A DNA stretch of 64,000 bases, taken from the IMG/VR virus record IMGVR_UViG_3300028045_000001, positions 175,961 to 239,960 of that record; one strand, given 5' to 3'. Position 1 is the stretch's first letter. Each line of letters begins with the position of its first letter. This document shows, in pieces, positions 9,812-31,496 of this stretch. Both the position numbers and the translations under genes were made by a program. The notes below the pieces were generated by a model, which was given only the letters and a program-made list of their open reading frames with translations, was not told where the DNA came from and searched no databases.

Positions 9812-10273
9812 ATGGATGCAATGGTGAATACTGTAAAAGAACTTTTGAAGGAGGCATTTGGCGACGATGTAAAATATAGCTTGCTGGTTATTGAGTCGGC
9901 GACTAAAAGAAAACTATCTGTAATTTCCAATTTATCCTCTACTTTTGAACTATCGACATTTAAAGGATTGATAAAGTTTATAGAAAGTAATACAGATGCA
10001 TGGGTAGACCATGTCAAATATATTAGAGGGATTGTAGCTCGCCCGGATACCGAGGACGCCATAGTCATGGGTCTATTAAAAACTGTGTTTAAAGGCAATA
10101 GCATTATATTAAATATATCGTCTTCGAAAAGTCCAAGCCGGACCATGTCTTATATGATCCCCGCACACACCGGGACCACAGTCCCACTGGAGGCAATATA
10201 CATTAGGGTACATGACCTAGAAGTAAGAGAGGCCGTTAGAAAAATAGAGAGCGGATCTGTCCCCATACATTAA
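9812..10273 (+). CDS. Hypothetical protein
   Basis: 153-aa ORF with GAGGAGG RBS. Confidence 0.6.
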   Translation: MDAMVNTVKELLKEAFGDDVKYSLLVIESATKRKLSVISNLSSTFELSTFKGLIKFIESNTDAWVDHVKYIRGIVARPDTEDAIVMGLLKTVFKGNSIILNISSSKSPSRTMSYMIPAHTGTTVPLEAIYIRVHDLEVREAVRKIESGSVPIH

Positions 10274-10289
10274 AAAAGGAGAATTCGAT

Positions 10290-10727
10290 ATGCAAGTGGT
10301 AGTGATAACTGGCGAAATAAAAGAACGAATAGAAAAAGCTATAGAACTCGCATCTAACAACCCAAGAACAGTAGACGCTCTAACCAAGCTGATGGAATCA
10401 ACTGATGAGTTGCCAGATGATTTTCATGCAGAGTACACCGTACTTATACCAATGGGTATCTCGGTTACATATACCCACGATGAAGCGATGGAAGGGTTGA
10501 TGTGTAGACATATTTCAATTTGTGGTAACGTAAAAGAAAAAGTAGTTGATCCCCATACTGTAAAAATGATAATGGAGGAGTATGGATTCATCAATACCCA
10601 TGTAAACGACCCAGAGCACGAAAAACGCCCGATAGTTCGCTTGGAGTATAATGACTCTGGAGCTGGGATCATCCATGCCCTCGAACCATTAGATGGAGAT
10701 ATGAGTAAACTGCGAAAACAGGCGTAG
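10290..10727 (+). CDS. Hypothetical protein
   Basis: 145-aa ORF with AAGGAG RBS. Confidence 0.65.
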   Translation: MQVVVITGEIKERIEKAIELASNNPRTVDALTKLMESTDELPDDFHAEYTVLIPMGISVTYTHDEAMEGLMCRHISICGNVKEKVVDPHTVKMIMEEYGFINTHVNDPEHEKRPIVRLEYNDSGAGIIHALEPLDGDMSKLRKQA

Positions 10728-10740
10728 TATACATAGTCCA

Positions 10741-10783
10741 GTGCCTAACAAGTACATAGCAATGCTATGTACTTGTTAGGCAC
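10741..10783. repeat. Perfect inverted repeat, 21-bp stem, 1-nt spacer
   Basis: gtgcctaacaagtacatagca-a-tgctatgtacttgttaggcac. Confidence 0.9.
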
Positions 10784-10814
10784 AACTGATTTATAAATTA
10801 TAGGACGGTGATAA

Positions 10815-11048
10815 ATGGATAGTTCATACAACGATGGATTCAAAGCTGGAGTTTTAAATGGAAGGGAACAAGTGCTTGAAAACATGAGAGAGATCGCCGC
10901 CACAATTGATGTCTGTAGGGCTTCCTCAAACTACATAGAAAAACAATTACACATTGGGCATTCGACTATGTACGACATATATGAATATAAATCAAATCTA
11001 TTGGATACCTTATTAAATAAAATAGATGGGATGATGGTGGACGACTAA
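10815..11048 (+). CDS. Hypothetical protein
   Basis: 77-aa ORF; N-terminal YNDGFKAG motif is common in small phage proteins. Confidence 0.55.
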   Translation: MDSSYNDGFKAGVLNGREQVLENMREIAATIDVCRASSNYIEKQLHIGHSTMYDIYEYKSNLLDTLLNKIDGMMVDD

Positions 11049-11113: not shown

Positions 11114-11161
11114 TACTATGTGTAAGGTATATGTATGTAGTTTTTAATATAGGAGAATAAT

Positions 11162-11353
11162 ATGGAAATATGTCAAGTCGATGGATGTAATAGAAAACAC
11201 TATGTCAAGGGCCATTGTGAAAAACACAATAAAGAAATGCAGATATGCGGCAGGATACTCCCAGTTATAAAGTGTAAGTTCGAAGGATGCGATGAAGAGC
11301 GTTTTAAGGAGGGGTACTGTCATGGATGCTACATGCGGATGTATAAACCATGA
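11162..11353 (+). CDS. Zinc-finger repeat protein, 2 units
   Basis: CQVDGC...GHCEKH and CKFEGC...GYCHGC; RBS AGGAG. Confidence 0.75.
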   Translation: MEICQVDGCNRKHYVKGHCEKHNKEMQICGRILPVIKCKFEGCDEERFKEGYCHGCYMRMYKP

Positions 11354-11378
11354 CAGAATAACATCATAGGAGAATAAT

Positions 11379-12164
11379 ATGAAAATATGTAAGGTTGATG
11401 GATGTGATAGAAAACACCATGCTAAAGGTTACTGTCACAAACATTATCTACAAATACAAAAATATGGCAAGATCCTGCCAGATAGAGTTATAACTGTTGG
11501 ATGTAAAGTCGATAGATGCGATGAAAAGCACCATGCTAAAGGATACTGTAGGAAACACTATCTACAAGTGCAACAACATGGCAAGACCATGTCTGATAGA
11601 GTTAAGCCAGTTGGATGTAAAGTCGATAGATGTGATGGAAAACGCTATGCTAAAGGGTATTGTAGTAGACACTATCGACAAGTGCATAAGCGTGACAAGA
11701 TCCTGCCAGATAGAGTTAAGCCCGTTGGATGTAAAGTCGATAGATGTGACGGAAAACACTATGCTAAAGGGTATTGTAGCAAACATTATCGCCGGATGAG
11801 AAGACATGGTAAGATTCTGCCAGATAGAGTCAAACCCGTTGGATGTACAGTCGATAGATGTAATGAAGAGCGTGTAGCTAAGGGGTATTGTCACAAACAC
11901 TATCATCAGATGCAGAGGAAGGGCAAGCTCCTGCCAGATAGAGTTGTTGGATGTAAAGTTGATGGATGTAAGGGAAAACACTATGCTAAAGGCCACTGTA
12001 GGAAACATTATCTACAAATGCATAGGTACGGTAAGATCCTACCAGATAAAGTCAAACACGTTGGATGTAAATTCAAAGGATGTGATGAAAAATACAAAGC
12101 CAAGGGCTATTGTAATACACATTACAATCAAATATGGCGACTTGGCAAGATCATAGGAGAATGA
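11379..12164 (+). CDS. CCCH zinc-finger tandem-repeat protein, 7 units
   Basis: Seven units of about 38 aa, C-K-V-D-(G/R)-C-x5-AKG-(Y/H)-C-x2-H-Y-x6-GK; very basic; no catalytic domain. Confidence 0.85.
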   Translation: MKICKVDGCDRKHHAKGYCHKHYLQIQKYGKILPDRVITVGCKVDRCDEKHHAKGYCRKHYLQVQQHGKTMSDRVKPVGCKVDRCDGKRYAKGYCSRHYRQVHKRDKILPDRVKPVGCKVDRCDGKHYAKGYCSKHYRRMRRHGKILPDRVKPVGCTVDRCNEERVAKGYCHKHYHQMQRKGKLLPDRVVGCKVDGCKGKHYAKGHCRKHYLQMHRYGKILPDKVKHVGCKFKGCDEKYKAKGYCNTHYNQIWRLGKIIGE

Positions 12165-12165
12165 T

Positions 12166-12600
12166 ATGAAAATATGTAAAGTTAGCTGGTGTGATAGGGG
12201 GCGTGTAGCTAAGGGGTATTGCATTACACACTACCAACAAATGCGGAGGAAGGGGAAGCTCCTACCAGACGGACCCGCAGTATGTAAAGTCGATGGGTGC
12301 GATGGAAAGCACTATGCTAAAGGCTACTGTCAAAAACACTATCTACAAATGCATAAGCGTGGCAAGACCATGCCAGATAGAGTTGCTGAATGTCAAGTCG
12401 ATGGGTGTGATAGAAAACACCATGCTAAAGGGTATTGTAGTAGACACTATCGACAAGTGCAAAAACATGGCAAGACCATGTCTGATAGAGTTATAACTGT
12501 TGGATGTAAAGTTGATGGATGTAAGAGAAAATACTATGCTAAAGGCCACTGTAGTAAACACTATCTACAAATATGGAAGCATGGTGAGATCATAAAATAA
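12166..12600 (+). CDS. CCCH zinc-finger tandem-repeat protein, 4 units
   Basis: Four units of the same motif; its RBS overlaps the stop of the previous paralogue. Confidence 0.85.
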   Translation: MKICKVSWCDRGRVAKGYCITHYQQMRRKGKLLPDGPAVCKVDGCDGKHYAKGYCQKHYLQMHKRGKTMPDRVAECQVDGCDRKHHAKGYCSRHYRQVQKHGKTMSDRVITVGCKVDGCKRKYYAKGHCSKHYLQIWKHGEIIK

Positions 12601-12640
12601 AAGTGTGCACTTAATCACACGCGATAGGAGGTAGTTGGAC

Positions 12641-13120
12641 ATGCACGAATGCATAGGTTCGTCTGTAATCCATGCGATGATGGCAGATGATGACTCGTAT
12701 ATAGCGCAGGAATTGTACGACTATTGCGCCTATAGTTTCGACAGAGATATTTATTTAGAAAGTGTCAATGAAAACTTCGAGATTATTCCTGGACTATTAA
12801 GAACCACTATGCGATCTGATACAGCCACCAATATGTATGTACTGACGGTGCACACTCTATGTGGATATGTGCTCACTATCCATACATCCAATAATTCGGG
12901 GTTACTTGATGCTTCTGGTGGGATCCTACAATTTAAAGACGTGTATATAGGTAAACACATATTGACATATTCTGGTGGATATGTTGGACCCGGTAGAATC
13001 CTCGACATCAAATGGGCTTGTTGCGCCATACCTTACTATGTGGACCTATACATGGACTACGGGATAAACTACCCCATTATTGATGGGGCAATAGTGCCAC
13101 CGATTAAATCAATTCTATAA
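12641..13120 (+). CDS. Stand-alone Hint/intein-like domain protein, paralogue 1
   Basis: ECIGSSVI...MYVLTV...TSNNSGLL...IGKHILT...IIDGAIVP; ATG 12641 is well spaced from GGAGG. Confidence 0.55.
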   Translation: MHECIGSSVIHAMMADDDSYIAQELYDYCAYSFDRDIYLESVNENFEIIPGLLRTTMRSDTATNMYVLTVHTLCGYVLTIHTSNNSGLLDASGGILQFKDVYIGKHILTYSGGYVGPGRILDIKWACCAIPYYVDLYMDYGINYPIIDGAIVPPIKSIL

Positions 13121-13135
13121 GGGAGGACGAATAAC

Positions 13136-13657
13136 GTGACTCACTATGGTACAAAAGAGTCCAAAGTATATGGAACATTATTCGGCGAGAACGAGTACAC
13201 TCTTGAAGATCTATTCGAATACTACTACGTGAGTATGTATGAGACCGATGAGCTCCCATATGCATTCGAGGAACTCGATGTCCCGACGTACATAGACAGT
13301 GTTGACAACAGAGGCTATTTAGTGCCAGCAGCGCTGATGGATATGTACTATGTTGGCGATCACCACTTATGCTACAGGATAACTACACAAGCTAATAATT
13401 ACAATTGTAATATTATTTCAACTAAAACTTCCAGGGACAGTTATTTTGTAGGGGTAGGAGGAGAGCTATTGCACGTGAGCCAATTGCAACAAGGTACTTC
13501 GATATTGGTATGCCCATTCCCTCCAGATGGAAATTTGTCCATAGGAGTGATAAGCGATGTAACTATATTGCCTCCAGAAGAAATATATGGGATAGTATTA
13601 GAGGCCGATGTACAATACTACATCAAGGATGGGTTTGTAGTCCCATCGAACACATAA
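13136..13657 (+). CDS. Stand-alone Hint/intein-like domain protein, paralogue 2
   Basis: YGTKESKV...TLEDL...CYRIT...SRDSYFV...SQLQQGTSIL...ISDV...EEIYGIVL...IKDGFVVPSN follows the intein block A-B-F-G pattern. Confidence 0.65.
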   Translation: MTHYGTKESKVYGTLFGENEYTLEDLFEYYYVSMYETDELPYAFEELDVPTYIDSVDNRGYLVPAALMDMYYVGDHHLCYRITTQANNYNCNIISTKTSRDSYFVGVGGELLHVSQLQQGTSILVCPFPPDGNLSIGVISDVTILPPEEIYGIVLEADVQYYIKDGFVVPSNT

Positions 13658-13673
13658 TAGTTGGAGAATAAAT

Positions 13674-14156
13674 ATGCACTATTGTACCATATGCGCAGAA
13701 GCAACATATGAAAATAGATGGTTATACACCATGTTTGATATAATTGAGATGCTTAAGCAACCGGACAGCTTATTAGTAGATGGAATAAATGCGAACGGAG
13801 AAACTATACTGACACCAGTACTCGGACTTAGTCCTGCTAAAGAAGCATCGTGCTACACCGTGGTAGCCAGAGTAGTACGTGGACTCACATATTCAATGGC
13901 GACGCGCACTTCTTCGGATAGTTATTTTGTTAAACTAGGTGGCGAACTAGTGGCAGTGACCCAACTTAAAGAAGGAGCAACTATATTGATGCATCCATAC
14001 ATGAATGCTTTGACGCCAGGGGTGGTCTTGAGTATTAGCGTAGACCAGATAAGAACAATGTGGGCATTAGAAGTAGACTATAAAACACCATATTACATTA
14101 AAGATGGGTTCGTAGTACCATCAAACAATATATTACAATTGGCCAACATGAGGTGA
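13674..14156 (+). CDS. Stand-alone Hint/intein-like domain protein, paralogue 3
   Basis: CYTVV...SSDSYFVKLGG...TQLKEGATIL...VLSISV...YYIKDGFVVPSN. Confidence 0.62.
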   Translation: MHYCTICAEATYENRWLYTMFDIIEMLKQPDSLLVDGINANGETILTPVLGLSPAKEASCYTVVARVVRGLTYSMATRTSSDSYFVKLGGELVAVTQLKEGATILMHPYMNALTPGVVLSISVDQIRTMWALEVDYKTPYYIKDGFVVPSNNILQLANMR

Positions 14157-14160
14157 TTGA

Positions 14161-14685
14161 ATGTACTATTTATCTGAATGTGAATATTTTCTTCATAGGA
14201 GCAAACGATACGATCTGCCCGAACTAAGTAAACAGACCGAATGTGGCACCATGCCTTCAATACAATTGCTCTCTATTAATAACAATGGTGGATTCCAAAT
14301 AGCCAATATACTGAGTGTGAATCAACTCAGTTACATAGATATACGCTACTTCGTTGCGGTTAGATCGCCTATATGTGAACATGGTCGTAGGGTAGATGAC
14401 ATATTCGCATTGAATGCTGCGCCCAACACTACATTTATTAAATTGGGAGGAGAGCCAATAAGAGCATCTCAATTAAAGAAGGGCCTCGCTATACTAATGT
14501 GTTCTCCGGAATTACAAGTAATAGAGGGGTCTGCTGCTAATGTGGGATACGGTGTGGTGGAGTCTATAACTGAATTACGCGATAGTAACATTTATGGCGT
14601 GGAACTTGAAGCTGACGATATCGCATACAACATTAAGAATAATTTCATTATTGCCAATGCTATGGCCATACAGGCGCTTAACTAA
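14161..14685 (+). CDS. Stand-alone Hint/intein-like domain protein, paralogue 4
   Basis: APNTTFIKLGG...ASQLKKGLAIL...VESITEL...IYGVEL...NNFIIAN. Confidence 0.62.
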   Translation: MYYLSECEYFLHRSKRYDLPELSKQTECGTMPSIQLLSINNNGGFQIANILSVNQLSYIDIRYFVAVRSPICEHGRRVDDIFALNAAPNTTFIKLGGEPIRASQLKKGLAILMCSPELQVIEGSAANVGYGVVESITELRDSNIYGVELEADDIAYNIKNNFIIANAMAIQALN

Positions 14686-14700
14686 TTTGGGGATTTATAA

Positions 14701-15267
14701 ATGTATTACGGAACAGAAGATACTTATGTACATTACAATGGATTAGATGTCACTCTATCAGAACTACATGACCGCAATATGGTCAATGATAGTGGGGGAA
14801 GGCCTATGTCCATTTACGGCATAAGCAAGTACGGCAATCTAATGGCCGCTAATATAGTAGCGACACAGTACGTTGGCGAGCTAATGTGCCGTACGGTGAC
14901 TGCAGTACCTAACGGATATCTTGGTGAAACATGCAGAATAACTATCGCCCATTACAGTTACTTTGTTGGAATTGGGGGACAGTTAATAAAAAGTGCACAG
15001 TTACAAAAAGGCGCGACAGTTGCAGTGTTCCCAAACTACATGTACCTGCCACATGTCCCAAAGAACTTGTGTCGATTTATAACACCTGGAAGAATATCCC
15101 ACATAAGTAAAACATCCATTAAAAAGATATACTGCTTAGCACCATCGACATATATCCCAGTTTTAATTGATAGTGGATTCATCACTTCCCACGACCAATG
15201 GGAGTACTGCAGGGCCTTCCAACAATCACCAATCTACAAAAGAATACAACTTATTGGAAAGGATTAA
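14701..15267 (+). CDS. Stand-alone Hint/intein-like domain protein, paralogue 5
   Basis: YGTEDTYV...TLSEL...AHYSYFVGIGG...SAQLQKGATV...ISHI...KIYCL...DSGFITSH. Confidence 0.62.
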   Translation: MYYGTEDTYVHYNGLDVTLSELHDRNMVNDSGGRPMSIYGISKYGNLMAANIVATQYVGELMCRTVTAVPNGYLGETCRITIAHYSYFVGIGGQLIKSAQLQKGATVAVFPNYMYLPHVPKNLCRFITPGRISHISKTSIKKIYCLAPSTYIPVLIDSGFITSHDQWEYCRAFQQSPIYKRIQLIGKD

Positions 15268-15274
15268 TAAATAT

Positions 15275-15784
15275 ATGTATATGTGCACAAAGGAATCAGT
15301 CGTATATGCAATGGCCCGTGGGGATGGAGCTTACGTGGCATGTAATCTTTTTGACTCGCACAATTGGGACATCAATGAGGGCATATTTATTGAGAGTATA
15401 GACAATGAGTTTGCTCCGATGCCATCTCTGTTGTATGGGATAATAAAGACCGGCAATAAAAGCATATTTTGTGTTGAGATACTCACTGCATCAAAGGTTG
15501 ACATTACGATACACATGTCTATAGACTCATGTTTAATTGATCTCTGTGGAGGTATAATAAAACCTATAAATGTATCTATTGGTAAACATGTGCTAACATT
15601 TAAAGGCACCGTTATTGAACCGGGCGTAATAACTAACATCACGCGGTCCGAGGCAACGATGACATATTGTTTAGATCTGCACTTGGGTGAGGATACCGAA
15701 GAATATGTATGTTATCCGGTGATAGATGGTGTAGTGGTCCCAGCATTTAATCATAGGGATGCATCCAGCAGGGTAGACTTTTAG
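15275..15784 (+). CDS. Stand-alone Hint/intein-like domain protein, paralogue 6
   Basis: MCTKESVV...SIDSCLI...VSIGKHVLT...ITNI...TYCLDL...VIDGVVVP. Start reassigned to ATG 15275, which removes the overlap with paralogue 5. Confidence 0.58.
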   Translation: MYMCTKESVVYAMARGDGAYVACNLFDSHNWDINEGIFIESIDNEFAPMPSLLYGIIKTGNKSIFCVEILTASKVDITIHMSIDSCLIDLCGGIIKPINVSIGKHVLTFKGTVIEPGVITNITRSEATMTYCLDLHLGEDTEEYVCYPVIDGVVVPAFNHRDASSRVDF

Positions 15785-15823
15785 CACTCCGATACTGTCC
15801 ACTGATGGACAGTATCGGAGTGC
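15784..15823. terminator. Bidirectional terminator-like inverted repeat, 18-bp stem, 4-nt loop
   Basis: gcactccgatactgtcca-ctga-tggacagtatcggagtgc between convergent genes; a T-run follows at about 15830. Confidence 0.75.
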
Positions 15824-15839
15824 CGGATATTTTTTTTAT

Positions 15840-17534
15840 TTACTGCAATGCCTCTATCTCTGTCGGTAAGAATGGCCTCGTCAAAGCATATAAGTTTGCT
15901 TTTGTAAATCCATTATGTTCGAACCTAAGTTTCCTATCTGGCGTTATAACTCCATTCAGTGAGAATAAGAAATCTTCTATGTTTTTATTTGCCTCTGTGG
16001 TTAGTATAGCGGAGCCATTGAGTGCATCGCCATCATAGTCAGCGTCAAAAGTACTTAAGGTTCCAGGATGAACGATCATCGAATCTACATATCCGTTACC
16101 GATTATTGGGTAATGGGGAAGTGTTATGAATACATCTGGATCGAACATAGTCGTTAGCCTAACCAATCTATCTGGCTTCGTGGTCGCAACTCTTATCCTT
16201 GGAGTTATAGTGTTATCGTCATTAGTTACTGGGTATCTGGTACATAGGCCATGTTTTCCTTTTGTGGCATGAAATGCAACTATGTAGAACATCTCGATGT
16301 AAGTTAACGGTCGTATATAGCTCTTATCTATATCGCCTTCACGATATGTCGATAACTCATTTATATCCCTAAAGATTATAACTTGCTCACCATCATCATA
16401 GACATTATAAATGTTCCATGTCTTACCATCAAGATCTTCCAGAGTAACGTTACTTGCTCTAAACGAGGCATCCTCAAATCTTTTAATGGTAGTACTAATT
16501 CCGTCAGAAGATACAAATCGATCTCGCATTTTTGGGGATATTTCAGTATAATGTAAGGACAGGCTCTTTGGGTCAATTACAGGTATCTGAGTAGAGGTTT
16601 CTTGCACCACCTGATTAAAGAACATTCTTTTAAGATAGTATATAGCTATCGGTTGAGTTACATTTATTGATTGTAGTGTCCCCATAATACACTCGTGGGA
16701 TTTCAACATCCTAGGATCAGTCGGAGAGTCTCCCGCTATTGTTGCAGCACTGATCACATTTCTTGCGCCATGTACTATACTTCGTTTTTGAAATTTGTCT
16801 TGAGCCCAACCATGTTTGTCGCTCATGAAATTCGTATAGTAATCAAAGATCTCATTAGCCTTTCTTTGGATAGCGTATCTAACAGTATCATATACTGGAT
16901 TTACTTTATAACTACCAGACGGCAAAGCCTGTGATAAGGCTATCAATGACATATATAGTTTGTTGGCATCGTCGTAGTTATCGATGTCGCCCATATTAAT
17001 ATCTCTGATGCCGGCCATCATAATTAGATATTTGTCGATATGCATACTTTCTATATGGTTATCTATCAGCTTTACTTTATAGCTCCGCTGTAAAGATTTG
17101 CTCGCTTTAAATTTTATTTTTTGTACATACTCCATAAAGAAACTATATCCTGTGCGAGCACGCTCGTCCTCTCTATCGATTTTAATTAAATCGCCAACTT
17201 CTTCATCAAAGTATGCAAAAGTATTACTCGACATTATTTCTCCGTATAATTTTTTTAGGGAGAGGAGGGTCTTGTATATTTTTGGATGAAATATCTTTGT
17301 CCTAAGGTTTATGTAGCCAAAATTTAACATCCTTTCAGGAGAACCTATTTCCCCAAAAATAGTTTGACTGAATAATCCATTTGGATCTAATTCATTGCTG
17401 GAGGGGACACGTATAAATTGTGAGGTAACTTCCCCAATATTGTTTTCTTTTATGTATTTGTCTACATCAAGTAAAGCTATTTTATACGGTTCTTTAGTGT
17501 CAGTGATTGTTGGCTCTTCTATTTGTATACTCAT
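15840..17534 (-). CDS. rpoC: RNA polymerase beta' subunit, N-terminal catalytic part (probably virion RNAP, phiKZ gp180-like)
   Basis: PNGLFSQTIFG...FGYINL N-terminal motif, RYP motif and catalytic HPGTLSTFDADYDGD (NADFDGD variant). Confidence 0.9.
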   Translation of the reverse strand: MSIQIEEPTITDTKEPYKIALLDVDKYIKENNIGEVTSQFIRVPSSNELDPNGLFSQTIFGEIGSPERMLNFGYINLRTKIFHPKIYKTLLSLKKLYGEIMSSNTFAYFDEEVGDLIKIDREDERARTGYSFFMEYVQKIKFKASKSLQRSYKVKLIDNHIESMHIDKYLIMMAGIRDINMGDIDNYDDANKLYMSLIALSQALPSGSYKVNPVYDTVRYAIQRKANEIFDYYTNFMSDKHGWAQDKFQKRSIVHGARNVISAATIAGDSPTDPRMLKSHECIMGTLQSINVTQPIAIYYLKRMFFNQVVQETSTQIPVIDPKSLSLHYTEISPKMRDRFVSSDGISTTIKRFEDASFRASNVTLEDLDGKTWNIYNVYDDGEQVIIFRDINELSTYREGDIDKSYIRPLTYIEMFYIVAFHATKGKHGLCTRYPVTNDDNTITPRIRVATTKPDRLVRLTTMFDPDVFITLPHYPIIGNGYVDSMIVHPGTLSTFDADYDGDALNGSAILTTEANKNIEDFLFSLNGVITPDRKLRFEHNGFTKANLYALTRPFLPTEIEALQ

Positions 17535-27398: not shown

Positions 27399-30300
27399 AT
27401 GTTAAAATACCCCCAATTTTATAGAAAATATGGCGTTTATAATTCGTCTGGATTTAAAACAATAATTACTCATAGAGAGGGACAACTAACAGAACTCCCA
27501 ATGGATTCAAGGCTACATATATTTGATAGTGTCTATAACTATACTAAAAACTATACTGTGGCGTTTGATATGAATCAGCCTTACTTCGGGAAGAAGAAGT
27601 TTGGAGTCTACAACATCCATAACACTTCGGCTGGGATCATTCCAAAAGATACTAAGCTTCAGTTCCCAACAAAAGATTTAAAACTTAAAACATTGGAGTT
27701 TGCAAACACTAATAAATCGAGATTCATTACTATCCCGGATGATCGTAAAATAGATAGCACTATGCCTATGAATTTAGTGGTTATTAATTACAACGCTTTA
27801 TCTAGAGTTAGGTTGATGGGTAAATTTATAGAGCAGAGACTTGTTGAACTGTTTTTAACAGAAGCAGTGAACCGAATAAATAAGTACAATGGGAACCATT
27901 TCGTATATGTCCCACTCGATACTATGACTTTTGTGCAGCAAGATTTTACAAGAACATATAAGGCATTTGTACCAGTCAGTTTTAAGTATACAACTAACGT
28001 ACAGTATATTCTAACGGTGCATATATTGAACTTGCTTAACATAGATTCGATTAATGGTACACTAAGTAAGTTACCTCCACACAAATATGACAGCGTTACA
28101 TTCATATTTAATGTTGGAGACAAATACGTGTATTACAATCTTGGAGAGATCTTTAAACTAAATGAAAAGAATAAAGCTTTCTTGCAGATTCAACGTCAAT
28201 TTAATGACTTAAGCGTGGCAGGAAGACCTACTGCGACAAAAGATCTAACCGCCATAGACCCAGAAAAAAATATAGATGCTCGTAGTTGCGATGTCCTGGT
28301 TGATGCGTTATCAGATTCTAAAACTGAAGTAACTCCAACCATTATAGATAGTGTTGCTGAAGTTGATCTCGCTGGGGAAATAGCTATCGAGCGGAGTAAG
28401 GAGCGCCTAACTACCAAACAATATGCGAAATTGAAAAAAATTTCAGTTAAGTATAAGGACGTTGTTTTAGAAAAGGGGTCCGGGGAAACCCTAGAGGCAA
28501 TATTAAATACTCCTATAGAACAAACCAATACCCTCGACATAGCGAACTTGGATTATTTAAAAGATGTCGTTCCAGACCAATCTATGTTGAGTACTTCGAT
28601 ACTGACTTCAAGAATACAGTATATGCAAAAGGCCTTTAAAAAAGATCTTGCCGGGACACTAACTGATTTTTCTAAGAATGGTTTGTTTCTAGTTGGGATT
28701 GAAAAGAATGAGGCACGTACAGAACTATCCAGAATAGATCATTATTCTGTGACATATGTTAACGAGAGGCAAGAGCAAACGACTATAAAATTTCATCTCC
28801 CTCATGTTGACAAAGATGGCGATATACTGGTCAACGGGATTAAGATGCGCTTGCGTTATCAAAATATAACAAAGCCTATATGTAAAATATCCAAGGACAC
28901 TGTTTCTTTATCATCAAACAATAACAAGGCTTTAGTGCAAAGACACCGGACAAAGGCCACGACATTCAATGAACACTTATTGAAGCATATCGTTAAACGG
29001 GGCGAAGATAAGATAAATCTTATATACGGGGTAGTTGCACCTATAGGTGACGTTCGGGCAAAGTTGCCGTATGAGTATACTTCACTTTCAGAAAAAATTA
29101 CTCAGATGCAAATTAAAGATCCGAAAATGGGGTCTGCTGAAATCGAGTTTAATTTTGAGTATACCGACCGGCTTCATGGGCTAACTGACAAAACTTCTAA
29201 GTTTGTAGAAAAGTTCGAGGAAGACAACAATACGGTGTATCTGGGTGGAAACACCACTACCCTATTTTTTATTGAGATCCAAGGGAAACTTTCTATCATA
29301 GACGTAAAAACCCTGGCAGTAATTCCAAACTCCCCAGATACATTACTGGACTACATATATGGCGTAGTAGGGCCACCATCAAAGCCACTTGCCAATTGGG
29401 TTGACTTGAGAATCCTCAGTAAAGATTTCCCAATGATTTTTATACTTGGATATAGATTTGGATTATCAAAGATATTGAAGTATCTAAATATAGATTACGC
29501 AGAATTCCCAAAAGGAGTCCGAGTTGTTGCCAAAGATCGATCCGACGTCATAATTGCTTTCCAGGATAAGTCCATAGTATTTAAACGATCGCCGTTAGCT
29601 AAATCGCTATTTTCTAATGGACTGAGATGGATGGATCTAAGGAAGTATTATTTTGAGGACATGGATGATCCACAAAAATATATCAATATATTACTTGATA
29701 AAAAAATTGGACCGCATTATTTGAGGGGCATCAGCAATTTCTTTGAAATGTTCTTAGACTACAAAACAAAAGAGGTTCTTTCGCAGATGGGAGAGCCAAC
29801 CAACATGTTAGACTTACTTGTAAGGGCTACCACTATGTTGGTCGATCAACAACACTTACCTCCAGCCAGTGTTGAGAATTTTAGAACGAGAACATACGAG
29901 AAATTCATCGATGTAATATATAACGAAATGAGTAGAGCACTTGGGCAACAAAAATATGCTGGACATCTAAGTAAGGAGAAGTTCACTATAAATCCCAATG
30001 CTGTATTTAATTCGGTTATGTCGGACACCCTCATGGATAATGTCTCAACGATAAATCCGATACATCAGGTTAAGATGGATTCTGCTTTCTCATACACTGG
30101 GATAGGCGGCAGGGATCAACAGTCGTTTGTTCACAGGGACAGACAATTTCCAGAGGACGGCGTGGGCGTTATATCTGAAGCAACTGTCGATAGTGGTAGG
30201 GTTGCCCTTAATTCCTGCTTCAGTCAAAATCCCAGTATAACTAATAACAATGGAATAATTAAACCAGTTGATTTAGATGAAGTTGAACCTGGACAGATGT

Positions 30301-31496
30301 TATCGGTCACTGGATTACTTATGCCTGGGGTTACATCTGATGATGGGAAGCGTGCCAACTTTGTTAATGGCCAATTTAGTCAATTTGTAGCAACTGAAGA
30401 TAGTGACATCTGTAAAGTTCGAACTGGGTATGATAAAGTAATTGCATCCCTATCGCGATATCCATTCGCAGTAGTAGCGAAGCAACCTGGAGTTGTGGTG
30501 GATGTTAATGAAAAACTTAAGATGTTTAAGATACAATACAAAGATGGGACAGTACGGTCTTATGAGTATGGAGCTATACCGACCATGGTTACTGGCGTAA
30601 GTGTAACTCAAAACATAGACTGTATAGTTAAAAAGGGCCAGAAGTTCCAGCGAGGTGACACACTATGTTACAATAGAGATTATTTTAAATTAACCTCGGA
30701 TGGCATACCGACATTTAAAATGGGCGTCCTTATGAATATCGCATTTATTGAGAACGACAATACCATAGAGGATAGTTCGGGGGTATCTAAAAGAGCCGCA
30801 AGTAGGATGGGGTATGAGCCGGTGCACAGAAGATCTATATCTATACATAAAGATTCTATTGTGTTTGATATAGTGAAACTTGGACAAGCAGTATTGAACA
30901 CTCATAACCTTCTAATATTTGACGATGGCGATATACCACAAATGTTCTTAAAAAATGAGTATATTGACGAGATATCAGAGCTAAATAGATCTACACCAAA
31001 ATGTAAATTCTCTGGAAAGATTCTGAGAATAAATGTTGTTTACAATTGTGAGCTATCTGATATGTCGGAGTCTCTAAGAGCAGTCGTCAAAGAAATCACT
31101 AGGCCTCAAAACTCCAAAGCTAACTTTTCTAATGACCCCGACGAAGGATTCGTTAAATCAAAGCCACTTATCGGAGAAAATAAATTAGGAAAGGTTACAG
31201 TGGACGAGGACAGTGTAGTGTTTGATTTCTACATCCAGGAAAAAGATAGCCTAGATGCTGGAGATAAAATATTCATAGCGTCCTCTTTAAAATCCGTTAT
31301 ATCTGAGATATTTGAGGAGCCCATAATAGCATCTGATCTAAAGGACGTTGACACTGGCAAACCACTCGAGATAGATTGTTTATTCTCTCAGACCAGTGTG
31401 TCGAATAGAATAGTGACATCACCTATGATACTTGGACTGGGAACACGATGGTGCGATGCCTTAGAAAAAAAACTATTGGACATATGGGAAGCTTGA
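27399..31496 (+). CDS. rpoB: RNA polymerase beta subunit, large part (probably virion RNAP, phiKZ gp178-like)
   Basis: 1365 aa. GVISEATVDSGRVAL, DDGKRANF, TGYDKVIA, IEDSSGVS and GDKIFIASSLKSVI...SNRIV correspond to conserved beta regions. Confidence 0.88.
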   Translation: MLKYPQFYRKYGVYNSSGFKTIITHREGQLTELPMDSRLHIFDSVYNYTKNYTVAFDMNQPYFGKKKFGVYNIHNTSAGIIPKDTKLQFPTKDLKLKTLEFANTNKSRFITIPDDRKIDSTMPMNLVVINYNALSRVRLMGKFIEQRLVELFLTEAVNRINKYNGNHFVYVPLDTMTFVQQDFTRTYKAFVPVSFKYTTNVQYILTVHILNLLNIDSINGTLSKLPPHKYDSVTFIFNVGDKYVYYNLGEIFKLNEKNKAFLQIQRQFNDLSVAGRPTATKDLTAIDPEKNIDARSCDVLVDALSDSKTEVTPTIIDSVAEVDLAGEIAIERSKERLTTKQYAKLKKISVKYKDVVLEKGSGETLEAILNTPIEQTNTLDIANLDYLKDVVPDQSMLSTSILTSRIQYMQKAFKKDLAGTLTDFSKNGLFLVGIEKNEARTELSRIDHYSVTYVNERQEQTTIKFHLPHVDKDGDILVNGIKMRLRYQNITKPICKISKDTVSLSSNNNKALVQRHRTKATTFNEHLLKHIVKRGEDKINLIYGVVAPIGDVRAKLPYEYTSLSEKITQMQIKDPKMGSAEIEFNFEYTDRLHGLTDKTSKFVEKFEEDNNTVYLGGNTTTLFFIEIQGKLSIIDVKTLAVIPNSPDTLLDYIYGVVGPPSKPLANWVDLRILSKDFPMIFILGYRFGLSKILKYLNIDYAEFPKGVRVVAKDRSDVIIAFQDKSIVFKRSPLAKSLFSNGLRWMDLRKYYFEDMDDPQKYINILLDKKIGPHYLRGISNFFEMFLDYKTKEVLSQMGEPTNMLDLLVRATTMLVDQQHLPPASVENFRTRTYEKFIDVIYNEMSRALGQQKYAGHLSKEKFTINPNAVFNSVMSDTLMDNVSTINPIHQVKMDSAFSYTGIGGRDQQSFVHRDRQFPEDGVGVISEATVDSGRVALNSCFSQNPSITNNNGIIKPVDLDEVEPGQMLSVTGLLMPGVTSDDGKRANFVNGQFSQFVATEDSDICKVRTGYDKVIASLSRYPFAVVAKQPGVVVDVNEKLKMFKIQYKDGTVRSYEYGAIPTMVTGVSVTQNIDCIVKKGQKFQRGDTLCYNRDYFKLTSDGIPTFKMGVLMNIAFIENDNTIEDSSGVSKRAASRMGYEPVHRRSISIHKDSIVFDIVKLGQAVLNTHNLLIFDDGDIPQMFLKNEYIDEISELNRSTPKCKFSGKILRINVVYNCELSDMSESLRAVVKEITRPQNSKANFSNDPDEGFVKSKPLIGENKLGKVTVDEDSVVFDFYIQEKDSLDAGDKIFIASSLKSVISEIFEEPIIASDLKDVDTGKPLEIDCLFSQTSVSNRIVTSPMILGLGTRWCDALEKKLLDIWEA

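What the first reader, a model, noticed from the sequence alone, without database searches (positions are those of the whole stretch)
12641..15784. Six tandem stand-alone intein/Hint-like proteins with catalytic residues systematically replaced
Seen in sequence: six adjacent ORFs of 159-188 aa share an ordered motif series. It runs: an N-terminal x-(G/C)-T-x-(D/E)-(S/T)-x-V in three copies (looser in the others), (C/M)Y-x-(I/V/L)T, (S/A)-x-x-(S/T)-x-F-(V/I), (S/T)QL-x-x-G-x-x-IL, (V/I)-x-x-I...IY-x-L and (K/I)DG-x-VV-x-x-N. Established knowledge: this order and spacing matches intein/Hint blocks A (CL-x-x-DT-x-V), B (T-x-x-H-x-F, then A-x-x-L-x-x-GD), F (VYDL) and G (NG-x-VVHN), and the sizes match endonuclease-free mini-inteins. 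Unusual: there are no exteins. By eye, position 1 is Y/M/E rather than Cys/Ser in the four copies with an alignable block A. The block-B His is Ser/Thr in all six, and the penultimate His before Asn is lost. Inference: a diversified family of non-splicing Hint folds repurposed as binding proteins or decoys, for example competing with host Hint-activated toxins or defence proteins, or acting as interaction hubs. I know of no described phage array of this kind.
Basis: partly seen in the sequence, partly recalled or inferred. Interest (0 to 1): 0.9.

Follow-up and report, generated by a model that had tools for sequence, protein, structure and literature searches.

The report
Six stand-alone dead intein-fold phage genes
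An uncultivated giant (phiKZ-like) phage carries an operon of six old, diverged gene copies that each encode only an intein-type (Hint) fold, with no host protein around it and none of the residues needed for protein splicing; this free-living form of the fold is almost unknown elsewhere and its job is still unknown.

Summary
Window 12641-15784 (+) carries six separately translated genes of 159-188 aa. They form one paralog family in two subfamilies: p1/p6 and p2-p5.

The Hint/intein fold call is supported three ways:
- A profile of the six gives one full-length hit, to a genuine ThyX mini-intein.
- hhalign against 14 ThyX inteins gives 98.3% probability, end to end.
- AlphaFold models match only inteins, Hedgehog and BIL structures. 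For p6 the pLDDT is 81 and the TM-score is 0.84-0.86.

There are no exteins. Only two residues precede intein position 1. All 14 real inteins keep Cys1, block-B His, block-F Asp, His-Asn and Ser+1. The six copies have E/Y/M at position 1 and Ser/Thr for the block-B His. The penultimate His is absent, and the terminal Asn survives at its canonical position in one copy only.

The family is almost unique. One other homolog was found among 1.84 billion representative proteins. None was found in 50,697 GenBank phages.

Function is not shown. My best guess is non-catalytic binding proteins made from one operon. The decoy and anti-defence idea has no evidence either way. I rate this a new variant of a known kind, of moderate to high interest.

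The parts
12641..13120 (+). p1, 159-aa stand-alone Hint-fold protein (subfamily A); pI 4.6
   Evidence: ORF and AGGAGG Shine-Dalgarno site 8 nt upstream. Paralog of p6, E 2e-22. Site table: A:1 Glu, B:10 Ser, G:6 Pro, G:7 Pro.
13136..13657 (+). p2, 173-aa stand-alone Hint-fold protein (subfamily B); GTG start; pI 4.2
   Evidence: Best hit in the window for an HMM built from real ThyX inteins. A:1 Tyr, B:10 Ser, G:6 Pro; an Asn lies one residue after the canonical site and is followed by Thr then stop.
13674..14156 (+). p3, 160-aa stand-alone Hint-fold protein (subfamily B) with a shortened block A
   Evidence: AF2 model with pLDDT 59; the Foldseek PDB top 50 are all inteins, Hog or BIL domains. 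Site table.
14161..14685 (+). p4, 174-aa stand-alone Hint-fold protein (subfamily B); the only copy with Asn at the canonical terminal position (Ala-Asn-Ala)
14701..15267 (+). p5, 188-aa stand-alone Hint-fold protein (subfamily B); basic (pI 8.9); near-canonical block A apart from Tyr-Gly at positions 1-2; Cys at F:4; about 25-residue C-terminal tail
15275..15784 (+). p6, 169-aa stand-alone Hint-fold protein (subfamily A); Cys at F:4
   Evidence: Gene call and start. AF2 pLDDT 81.2, pTM 0.78. Foldseek PDB TM 0.84-0.86 and rmsd 2.3-2.7 A to DnaB, RecA and NrdJ-1 mini-inteins.
15784..15823 (.). Perfect 18-bp hairpin followed by a T run. Likely a bidirectional terminator that closes the six-gene operon and the convergent RNA polymerase gene.
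   Evidence: I1.

Best explanation
The locus is an operon of six anciently duplicated genes. Each encodes a complete Hint (Hedgehog/intein) fold as a free protein of about 18-21 kDa, and most are acidic. The genes descend from, or share an ancestor with, mini-inteins. They are not inserted in any host protein, and they lack the Cys/Ser1, block-B His, block-F Asp and His-Asn(+1 nucleophile) set, so they cannot splice and most likely cannot self-cleave.

Shown here:
- the fold and the homology to inteins;
- the loss of the catalytic residues;
- separate translation of each gene;
- one transcription unit ending at a strong terminator;
- maintenance of six intact ORFs despite 14-38% identity.

Inferred: the fold is kept as a rigid beta scaffold. 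Its family-conserved residues are the former active-site cleft (N-terminal M-x-Y-[CG]-T, S-x-[DN]-[ST] in block B, and D-G-F-V-V-P in block G) and the core glycines. The surfaces have diverged. The copies therefore probably act as non-enzymatic binding proteins with different partners during infection. Whether those partners belong to the host or the phage is unknown.
For: Fold: the p6 model has pLDDT 81 and pTM 0.78. All of its top 50 PDB matches are inteins, Hedgehog or BIL domains, with TM up to 0.86 over whole mini-inteins. The p3 model gives the same families.

Homology: a profile of the six was scored against 1.84 billion proteins and gave a collinear, full-length hit to the intein of a ThyX protein that Pfam also calls Intein_splicing. 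hhalign against 14 ThyX inteins gives 98.3% probability, E 1e-13, over 155 columns. In the reverse HMM search, p2, p6 and p1 are the three best of 567 window ORFs.

Dead catalytic sites: site table, in the same register.

No exteins, separate cistrons and a terminator.

Selection: six intact ORFs with no DNA-level repeat left and GC content like the rest of the genome.

Five of the six copies are acidic, and the family is Cys-rich (2.6% against 0.85% in large ORFs of the window).
Against: There is no direct evidence for any binding partner, expression time or phenotype. The family is found in essentially one phage lineage, so no comparative or dN/dS test is possible. The four contigs recovered are at least 99.9% identical.

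Ser/Thr is conserved at the former His site, and Cys occurs at position 2 (p1, p3, p6) or at F:4 (p5, p6). These could point to a different chemistry rather than none.

The neighbouring genes are virion and RNA polymerase genes, which would also fit a structural role.

Pfam, NCBIfam and PHROG models do not recognise the proteins.
Confidence: 0.5

Rival explanations
1. The proteins keep, or have gained, a catalytic activity at the old active-site cleft. Candidates are self-cleavage by a non-canonical route, or a trans-acting peptidase or acyl-transfer activity. It would use the conserved Ser/Thr at block-B position 10, the Cys at position 2, or the Cys at block-F position 4.
For: The replacements are patterned rather than random: Ser/Thr in 7 of 7 members at B:10, Ser in 5 of 7 at B:7, and Pro in 5 of 7 at G:6. 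The best-conserved segments of the family are the former catalytic blocks. p5 and p6 have Cys at F:4, the nucleophile position of class 3 inteins, and p5 also has Thr at G:5. The outside homolog P0007 has Cys at position 1.
Against: The block-B His is missing in every member, although it is invariant in the 14 real inteins compared and near-universal in the superfamily (established knowledge). The class 3 Trp at B:12 is absent; the family has Phe or Leu there. No single candidate nucleophile is conserved across all copies. With only 2 residues upstream and 0-25 downstream there is nothing meaningful to cleave or ligate in cis.
Confidence: 0.12
2. They are virion or assembly proteins, for example internal head or scaffold-like paralogs of the kind expanded in phiKZ-like phages. 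The Hint fold would then be only a building block.
For: The array lies among virion structural genes, a virion-type multisubunit RNA polymerase and the giant tail/lysin protein. phiKZ-like phages are known to carry tandem paralog families of head proteins (established knowledge, not tested here).
Against: No similarity to any PHROG structural family. The array sits with other small accessory ORFs and a repeat-expanded Zn-ribbon gene set at a break in synteny relative to Psa21. The family is absent from all sequenced relatives, which is unusual for structural components.
Confidence: 0.15
3. They are functionless leftovers of selfish elements: former inteins or intein-like mobile genes that were copied and are decaying.
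For: All splicing residues are lost. The adjacent genes are made only of the Zn-ribbon DNA-binding module of phage HNH homing endonucleases, without a nuclease domain, so the neighbourhood looks like a deposit of mobile-element parts. The taxonomic spread is extremely narrow.
Against: All six ORFs of 159-188 codons are intact, each with a ribosome-binding site, although the copies have diverged to 14-38% identity with no DNA similarity left. At this GC content a random 165-codon frame stays open with a probability of about 2e-5 (my estimate from base composition). The fold is still predicted confidently. Family-specific motifs are conserved, including in the outside homolog.
Confidence: 0.1
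4. The Hint assignment is an artefact of shallow alignments and of beta-rich composition, and the proteins have another fold.
For: The alignments used for modelling hold only 6-7 sequences. The p3 model is weak, at pLDDT 59. Three other profile hits at similar E-values are beta-repeat proteins that look spurious. Pfam Hint-clan models give no hit at E of 1 or better.
Against: Three independent lines agree: the profile hit to a real intein, profile-profile comparison end to end, and two structure models whose top 50 PDB neighbours are all Hint superfamily members. Blocks A, B, F and G fall in register in every alignment.
Confidence: 0.03

Closest known systems
Class 1 mini-inteins (for example the ThyX, DnaB, RecA and NrdJ-1 mini-inteins)
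   Same: Same size (about 140-170 residues) and same horseshoe beta fold, with TM up to 0.86. Profile-level sequence homology runs over the whole domain, and blocks A, B, F and G are in the same order and register.
   Different: Not inserted in a host protein. No Cys/Ser1, block-B His, block-F Asp, penultimate His or +1 nucleophile, and the terminal Asn sits at its canonical place in only one copy. Present as six diverged paralogs in tandem rather than as one mobile insertion.
Bacterial intein-like (BIL) domains
   Same: Hint-fold domains that are not classical inteins, occur in variable non-essential proteins, and do not need a +1 nucleophile. BIL structures are among the structural matches.
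   Different: BIL domains are embedded in larger proteins and keep the N-terminal nucleophile and the block-B His for cleavage (established knowledge; PMC7664689). These proteins are free-standing and lack both.
Yeast HO endonuclease and the WHO elements (domesticated intein-derived genes)
   Same: A precedent for an intein-derived protein that exists without exteins and does not splice (PMC7282813, abstract seen).
   Different: HO keeps a LAGLIDADG nuclease and a zinc-finger DNA-binding domain and acts on DNA. The phage proteins are Hint-only, mostly acidic, and have no nuclease domain. The Zn-ribbon genes next door are separate genes.
Class 3 inteins (WCT motif, proposed phage origin)
   Same: No nucleophile at position 1. 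p5 and p6 carry Cys at block-F position 4, and p5 carries Thr at G:5.
   Different: The block-B His and the Trp at B:12 are absent, and there are no exteins, so the defining triad is not present.
Unnamed stand-alone viral Hint-fold proteins in BFVD (A0A2Z3EFP0, 172 aa; 'Hint module' A0A8S5P792, 144 aa)
   Same: Similar length, and a predicted whole-protein Hint fold. TM is 0.73/0.72 for A0A2Z3EFP0 and 0.58/0.66 for A0A8S5P792.
   Different: About 12% identity, and not retrieved by any sequence search. Their catalytic residues, genome context and copy number could not be examined with the tools at hand.

Membership tests
Hint (Hedgehog/intein) fold superfamily | Horseshoe-like all-beta fold with pseudo-twofold symmetry and adjacent termini | tested here: met
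   AF2 models of p6 (pLDDT 81) and p3 (pLDDT 59). The Foldseek PDB top 50 are all inteins, Hedgehog-C or BIL domains, with TM up to 0.86 and rmsd 2.3-2.7 A.
Hint (Hedgehog/intein) fold superfamily | Detectable sequence homology to bona fide members over the whole domain | tested here: met
   Profile hit to the ThyX intein P0009, E 4.6e-5 against 1.84e9 proteins, profile positions 7-153. hhalign against 14 inteins: 98.3% probability, E 1e-13.
Hint (Hedgehog/intein) fold superfamily | Match to a curated Hint-clan model (Pfam or NCBIfam) above its threshold | tested here: not met
   No Pfam hit at E of 1 or better and no NCBIfam intein model hit at E of 10 or better for any member. The family is too divergent for single-sequence to model searches.
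Intein (protein-splicing element) | In-frame insertion inside a host protein, with N- and C-exteins | tested here: not met
   Each copy is its own cistron with a Shine-Dalgarno site, a start and a stop. Two residues (Met-X) precede position 1 and 0-25 follow the domain.
Intein (protein-splicing element) | Cys/Ser/Thr nucleophile at position 1 (classes 1) | tested here: not met
   E, Y, Y, Y, Y, M in p1-p6, against Cys in 14 of 14 ThyX inteins.
Intein (protein-splicing element) | Block B T-x-x-H histidine | tested here: not met
   S, S, S, T, S, S in p1-p6, against His in 14 of 14 real inteins. The register is the same.
Intein (protein-splicing element) | C-terminal His-Asn followed by Cys/Ser/Thr at +1 | tested here: not met
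   G:6 is P, P, P, A, S, P. G:7 is P, S, S, N, H, A. The +1 residue is I, N, N, A, D, F. Only p4 has Asn in place, and it is followed by Ala.
Intein (protein-splicing element) | Protein splicing or cleavage activity | not testable with these tools
   Needs expression of tagged fusions.
Class 3 intein | Trp (B:12), Cys (F:4), Thr (G:5) triad together with the block-B His | tested here: not met
   F:4 Cys occurs only in p5 and p6. B:12 is Phe or Leu. G:5 Thr occurs only in p5. The B:10 His is absent in all.
Bacterial intein-like (BIL) domain | Hint domain embedded in a larger variable protein, with the N-terminal nucleophile and block-B His retained | tested here: not met
   The proteins are free-standing and lack both residues.
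Split intein / fractured gene | N- and C-halves of the Hint fold on separate genes, each fused to an extein half | tested here: not met
   Every ORF holds blocks A, B, F and G, that is a complete fold, and carries no extein.
HO/WHO-type domesticated intein | Hint-derived domain fused to a LAGLIDADG nuclease and a zinc-finger DNA-binding domain | tested here: not met
   There is no room and no match for a nuclease domain in 159-188 aa. The Zn-ribbon modules are in separate upstream genes.

The most novel reading that the evidence does not exclude
Free-living, non-splicing Hint-fold proteins may be a distinct functional class in large phages. In this class the former splice-site cleft would be re-used as a peptide-, protein- or ligand-binding site and diversified by tandem duplication, for instance as a set of inhibitors of host factors. 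Alternatively they may be a surviving lineage of the extein-free ancestors from which inteins arose. Either reading would give the first handle on what the Hint fold does when it is not a selfish element. The unnamed 172-aa BFVD protein hints that the class may be wider than sequence searches show.
Probability: 0.2. Interest if true: 0.8.

Novelty: new variant of a known kind. Interest (0 to 1): 0.6.

Why it matters
Inteins and their relatives are known almost only as self-processing modules inside other proteins. How the Hint fold arose, and whether it has any life outside self-processing, are open questions.

This locus offers six naturally extein-free, catalytically stripped versions of the fold. 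A phage has kept them intact through long divergence, which argues that the bare fold does something useful.

The family gives a concrete test set for several questions: residual chemistry, what the empty splice cleft binds, and domestication of selfish-element parts in giant phages. It could also supply compact, stable beta scaffolds for engineering.

Its value is limited by an unknown host, an unknown function and a very narrow distribution.

Tried and rejected
Searches that found nothing:
- Single-sequence searches of the proteins against Pfam, PHROGs, NCBIfam and PADLOC gave nothing usable. The weak hits were DUF7561 at E 0.15 and phrog_32812 at E 0.02, which I treated as noise.
- Megablast and tblastn against 50,697 GenBank phages found no relatives. 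The only hits were chance matches to Bacillus phage capsid genes at E 2-3.
- Word-indexed searches of 5.8 billion protein clusters returned only the phage's own proteins.
- Scans of IMG/VR and JGI metagenome contigs returned only the source contig and its near-identical copies. An alignment of all six was too divergent to derive search patterns.
- Literature searches for stand-alone or non-splicing Hint proteins in phages, and for Hint domains in anti-phage defence, found no precedent. Sample accessions are not mentioned in any paper held.

Analyses that could not be completed:
- Population variation for a selection test: the four other contigs are at least 99.9% identical, with one non-synonymous SNP in p4.
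- The only outside homolog, P0007, lies on a 668-bp contig, so it has no context.

Readings considered and rejected:
- A polyprotein or read-through: the frames differ, and each gene has its own start and ribosome-binding site.
- Split inteins or fractured genes: each ORF holds a complete fold.
- DNA binding, as in the PI-SceI/HO Hint domains: five of the six proteins are strongly acidic.
- Profile hits P0008, P0010 and P0011: these are beta-repeat proteins and probably spurious.
Full report
**1. What is there**

The window is the last 64 kb of a 239,960-bp uncultivated viral contig, IMG/VR UViG_3300028045_000001. It belongs to a divergent phiKZ-like jumbo phage.

- Its split multisubunit RNA polymerase genes are about 30% identical to those of Pseudomonas phage Psa21 and relatives.
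- Virion structural genes, a helicase, a lysozyme and a 2086-aa tail/tape-measure-like protein surround the locus.

Between 12641 and 15784 on the + strand lie six ORFs of 159, 173, 160, 174, 188 and 169 aa (gene calls).

- Each has its own Shine-Dalgarno-like sequence 6-10 nt before the start.
- The gaps between genes are 4-16 nt, and the genes lie in different frames. They are therefore six cistrons, not one polyprotein.
- A perfect 18-bp hairpin with a T run (15784-15823) follows the last stop and faces the convergent RNA polymerase gene. The six genes thus end in one terminator.

**2. Are they a family?**

Yes. Pairwise BLASTP defines two subfamilies:

- p1/p6, with E 2e-22;
- p2-p5, with E from 1e-16 down to 3e-2.

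Profile-profile comparison joins the two at 97% probability, E 5e-11. Identities are 14-38%.

No DNA-level repeat remains, and GC content matches the genome. The duplications are therefore old and the genes are resident. No seventh copy exists in the window.

The order of the blocks is right.

**3. Is it a Hint/intein fold?**

Three independent lines say yes.

(a) A profile of the six was scored by HMMER against 1.84 billion representative proteins.
- It found the six themselves and one 157-aa homolog, P0007 (E 4e-15).
- It also found a 395-aa ThyX protein, P0009. The match covers profile positions 7-153 and protein residues 107-250. That is the segment Pfam calls Intein_splicing, inserted in the Thy1 domain.
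- Three further hits at E 1e-5 to 1e-3 are beta-repeat proteins and look spurious.

(b) I collected 13 more ThyX inteins and trimmed them to the splicing domain.
- hhalign against the seven-member family alignment gives 98.3% probability, E 1.2e-13, over 155 columns. The alignment runs from the residue before Cys1 to the residue after the terminal Asn.
- In reverse, an HMM of the real inteins ranks p2, p6 and p1 first among 567 six-frame ORFs of the window.

(c) AlphaFold2 models were compared with solved structures.
- The p6 model, built from the seven-sequence alignment, has pLDDT 81.2 and pTM 0.78.
- Its 50 best PDB neighbours are all inteins, Hedgehog autoprocessing domains or BIL domains. 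TM-scores of 0.84-0.86 and rmsd of 2.3-2.7 A extend over entire DnaB, RecA and NrdJ-1 mini-inteins.
- The weaker p3 model (pLDDT 59) gives the same list.

Curated single-family models do not detect the proteins. That is why the locus is unannotated.

**4. Catalytic residues**

MAFFT with the real inteins, HMMER and hhalign all give the same register. The 14 genuine inteins are invariant at every catalytic position. The six copies are not:

| Position | 14 ThyX inteins | p1-p6, in order |
|---|---|---|
| A:1 | Cys | E, Y, Y, Y, Y, M |
| B:7 | Thr or Ser | S, S, S, A, A, S |
| B:10 | His | S, S, S, T, S, S |
| F:4 | Asp | Y, G, A, G, C, C |
| G:6 | His | P, P, P, A, S, P |
| G:7 | Asn | P, S, S, N, H, A |
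| +1 | Ser | I, N, N, A, D, F |

- Two residues (Met-X) precede position 1. Between 0 and about 25 residues follow the domain.
The loss goes further than stated, because the block-F Asp and, in five copies, the terminal Asn are also gone.
- The substitutions are patterned: Ser/Thr at B:10 in all seven members and Pro at G:6 in five. The most conserved parts of the family are the former catalytic blocks plus the core glycines. This pattern may reflect fold constraints or a re-used cleft.
- The outside homolog P0007 has Cys at position 1 (M-F-C...). It shares the Ser, Gly, Pro, Pro pattern elsewhere.
- The class 3 (WCT) signature is not met. Cys at F:4 occurs in p5 and p6 only, there is no Trp at B:12, and there is no block-B His.

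**5. Distribution**

The family is nearly private to this phage.

- Four other contigs from other samples are the same phage at 99.9% identity or more.
- P0007 sits on a 668-bp contig with no informative neighbour.
- Nothing was found in 50,697 GenBank phages, in IMG/VR, in JGI metagenome contigs or in 5.8 billion protein clusters.

Structure search of BFVD mostly returns intein-bearing terminases, polymerases and helicases. Its best hit, however, is an unnamed stand-alone 172-aa viral protein (A0A2Z3EFP0; TM 0.73/0.72), and a 144-aa 'Hint module' also appears. Free Hint-fold ORFs may therefore exist elsewhere in viruses without being recognisable by sequence. I could not examine those entries further.

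**6. Context**

In Psa21 the orthologous RNA polymerase gene is followed directly by the large RNA polymerase subunit gene. Here that subunit lies at 27399-31496. The space downstream of the 564-aa polymerase gene is occupied by the Hint array and a run of small ORFs.

Immediately upstream (11162-12600) are three genes of 63, 261 and 144 aa.

- They are built only from a 38-aa Cys/His module repeated about 12 times at 60-81% DNA identity.
- The module matches the N-terminal DNA-binding part of phage HNH homing endonucleases and Pfam DUF5763, without the nuclease half.

Two expansions of parts typical of selfish elements thus sit side by side at a synteny break. That fits an accessory, fast-evolving island. 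A common origin of the two expansions is only a conjecture.

**7. Mechanism**

Shown:
- a complete Hint fold;
- no exteins;
- no splicing residues;
- six separately translated proteins from one terminated unit;
- long-term maintenance of the open frames.

Inferred:
- The proteins do not splice or self-cleave, and they act through binding.
- Five are acidic (pI 4.2-5.3) and one is basic (pI 8.9). All are soluble by composition and comparatively Cys-rich.
- This argues against the DNA-binding role that Hint domains play in PI-SceI and HO. It is compatible with protein-binding or mimicry roles.

I put about 0.9 on 'stand-alone, splicing-dead Hint-fold paralog family'. I put about 0.5 on the combined statement that includes a non-catalytic binding function. 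The specific idea of decoys for Hint-activated toxins or defence proteins has no support. PADLOC gave no match, and no paper in the library connects Hint domains with anti-phage defence.

The rivals are residual or novel catalysis at the old cleft (0.12), a virion or assembly role (0.15), decaying selfish-element remnants (0.10) and a fold artefact (0.03).

**8. Comparison and novelty**

By fold and remote homology the proteins belong to the Hint superfamily. They fail every defining test for an intein, a class 3 intein, a BIL domain, a split intein or an HO-type domesticated intein (see the membership table).

The nearest concept is domestication of an intein-derived gene, as in yeast HO (PMC7282813). 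Unlike HO, these proteins have no nuclease, they are a tandem multigene family, and they are in a phage.

A comparative survey of 224 jumbo phages mentions inteins only as insertions in essential genes (PMC7824862). I found no description of such an array.

I rate it a new variant of a known kind, with interest 0.6. The structural identification is solid, and the object is unusual and testable. The function is unknown and the family is confined to one uncultivated lineage.

Noticed in passing
window 11149-12617 (genes 11162-11353, 11379-12164, 12166-12600, + strand): Three adjacent genes consist only of a 38-aa Cys/His module (C-K-V-D-G-C-x5-A-K-G-Y-C-x-K-H-Y). It is repeated about 12 times as a 114-nt tandem repeat at 60-81% DNA identity. 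It matches the N-terminal part of phage HNH homing endonucleases (PHROG 5351 and 1271) and Pfam DUF5763, but no nuclease domain is present. This is a recent expansion lying next to the old Hint expansion.
   Followed up: partly
window 15840-17534 (-) and 27399-31496 (+); L006 (Psa21): Synteny break. In Psa21 the ortholog of the 564-aa RNA polymerase subunit is followed directly by the large RNA polymerase subunit. Here the large subunit lies 10 kb away on the other strand, and the Hint array with small ORFs fills the junction.
   Followed up: partly
L001:151-624 (protein P0007): The only outside homolog (157 aa, subfamily A) has Cys at intein position 1, preceded by Met-Phe, but shares the loss of the block-B His, the penultimate His and the terminal Asn. 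Its contig is 668 bp, so its context is unknown.
   Followed up: partly
BFVD entries A0A2Z3EFP0 (172 aa) and A0A8S5P792 (144 aa): These are stand-alone viral proteins predicted to be entirely Hint fold. A0A2Z3EFP0 was the best BFVD neighbour of the p6 model (TM 0.73/0.72). They are not retrievable by sequence, and I could not look up their identity or context.
   Followed up: no
proteins P0012-P0023 (ThyX inteins fetched as yardsticks): Most ThyX inteins related to P0009 carry an inserted HNH-type (C-x-x-C-H ... H) endonuclease segment rather than LAGLIDADG. Two are annotated with Pfam HNH (PF01844).
   Followed up: no
window 12603-12620: A small hairpin (GTGTG-N8-CACAC) followed by an A/T-rich stretch lies between the last Zn-ribbon gene and p1, just upstream of the p1 ribosome-binding site. 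It may be a weak terminator or a processing site separating the two gene sets.
   Followed up: no
window 14243 (p4 codon 28): The only polymorphism inside the array among five near-identical contigs changes Cys28 to Phe in p4 (contig Ga0233413_10009459).
   Followed up: no
window 9812-11048: Three small ORFs (153, 145 and 77 aa) upstream of the Zn-ribbon genes have no Pfam or PHROG match at all.
   Followed up: no
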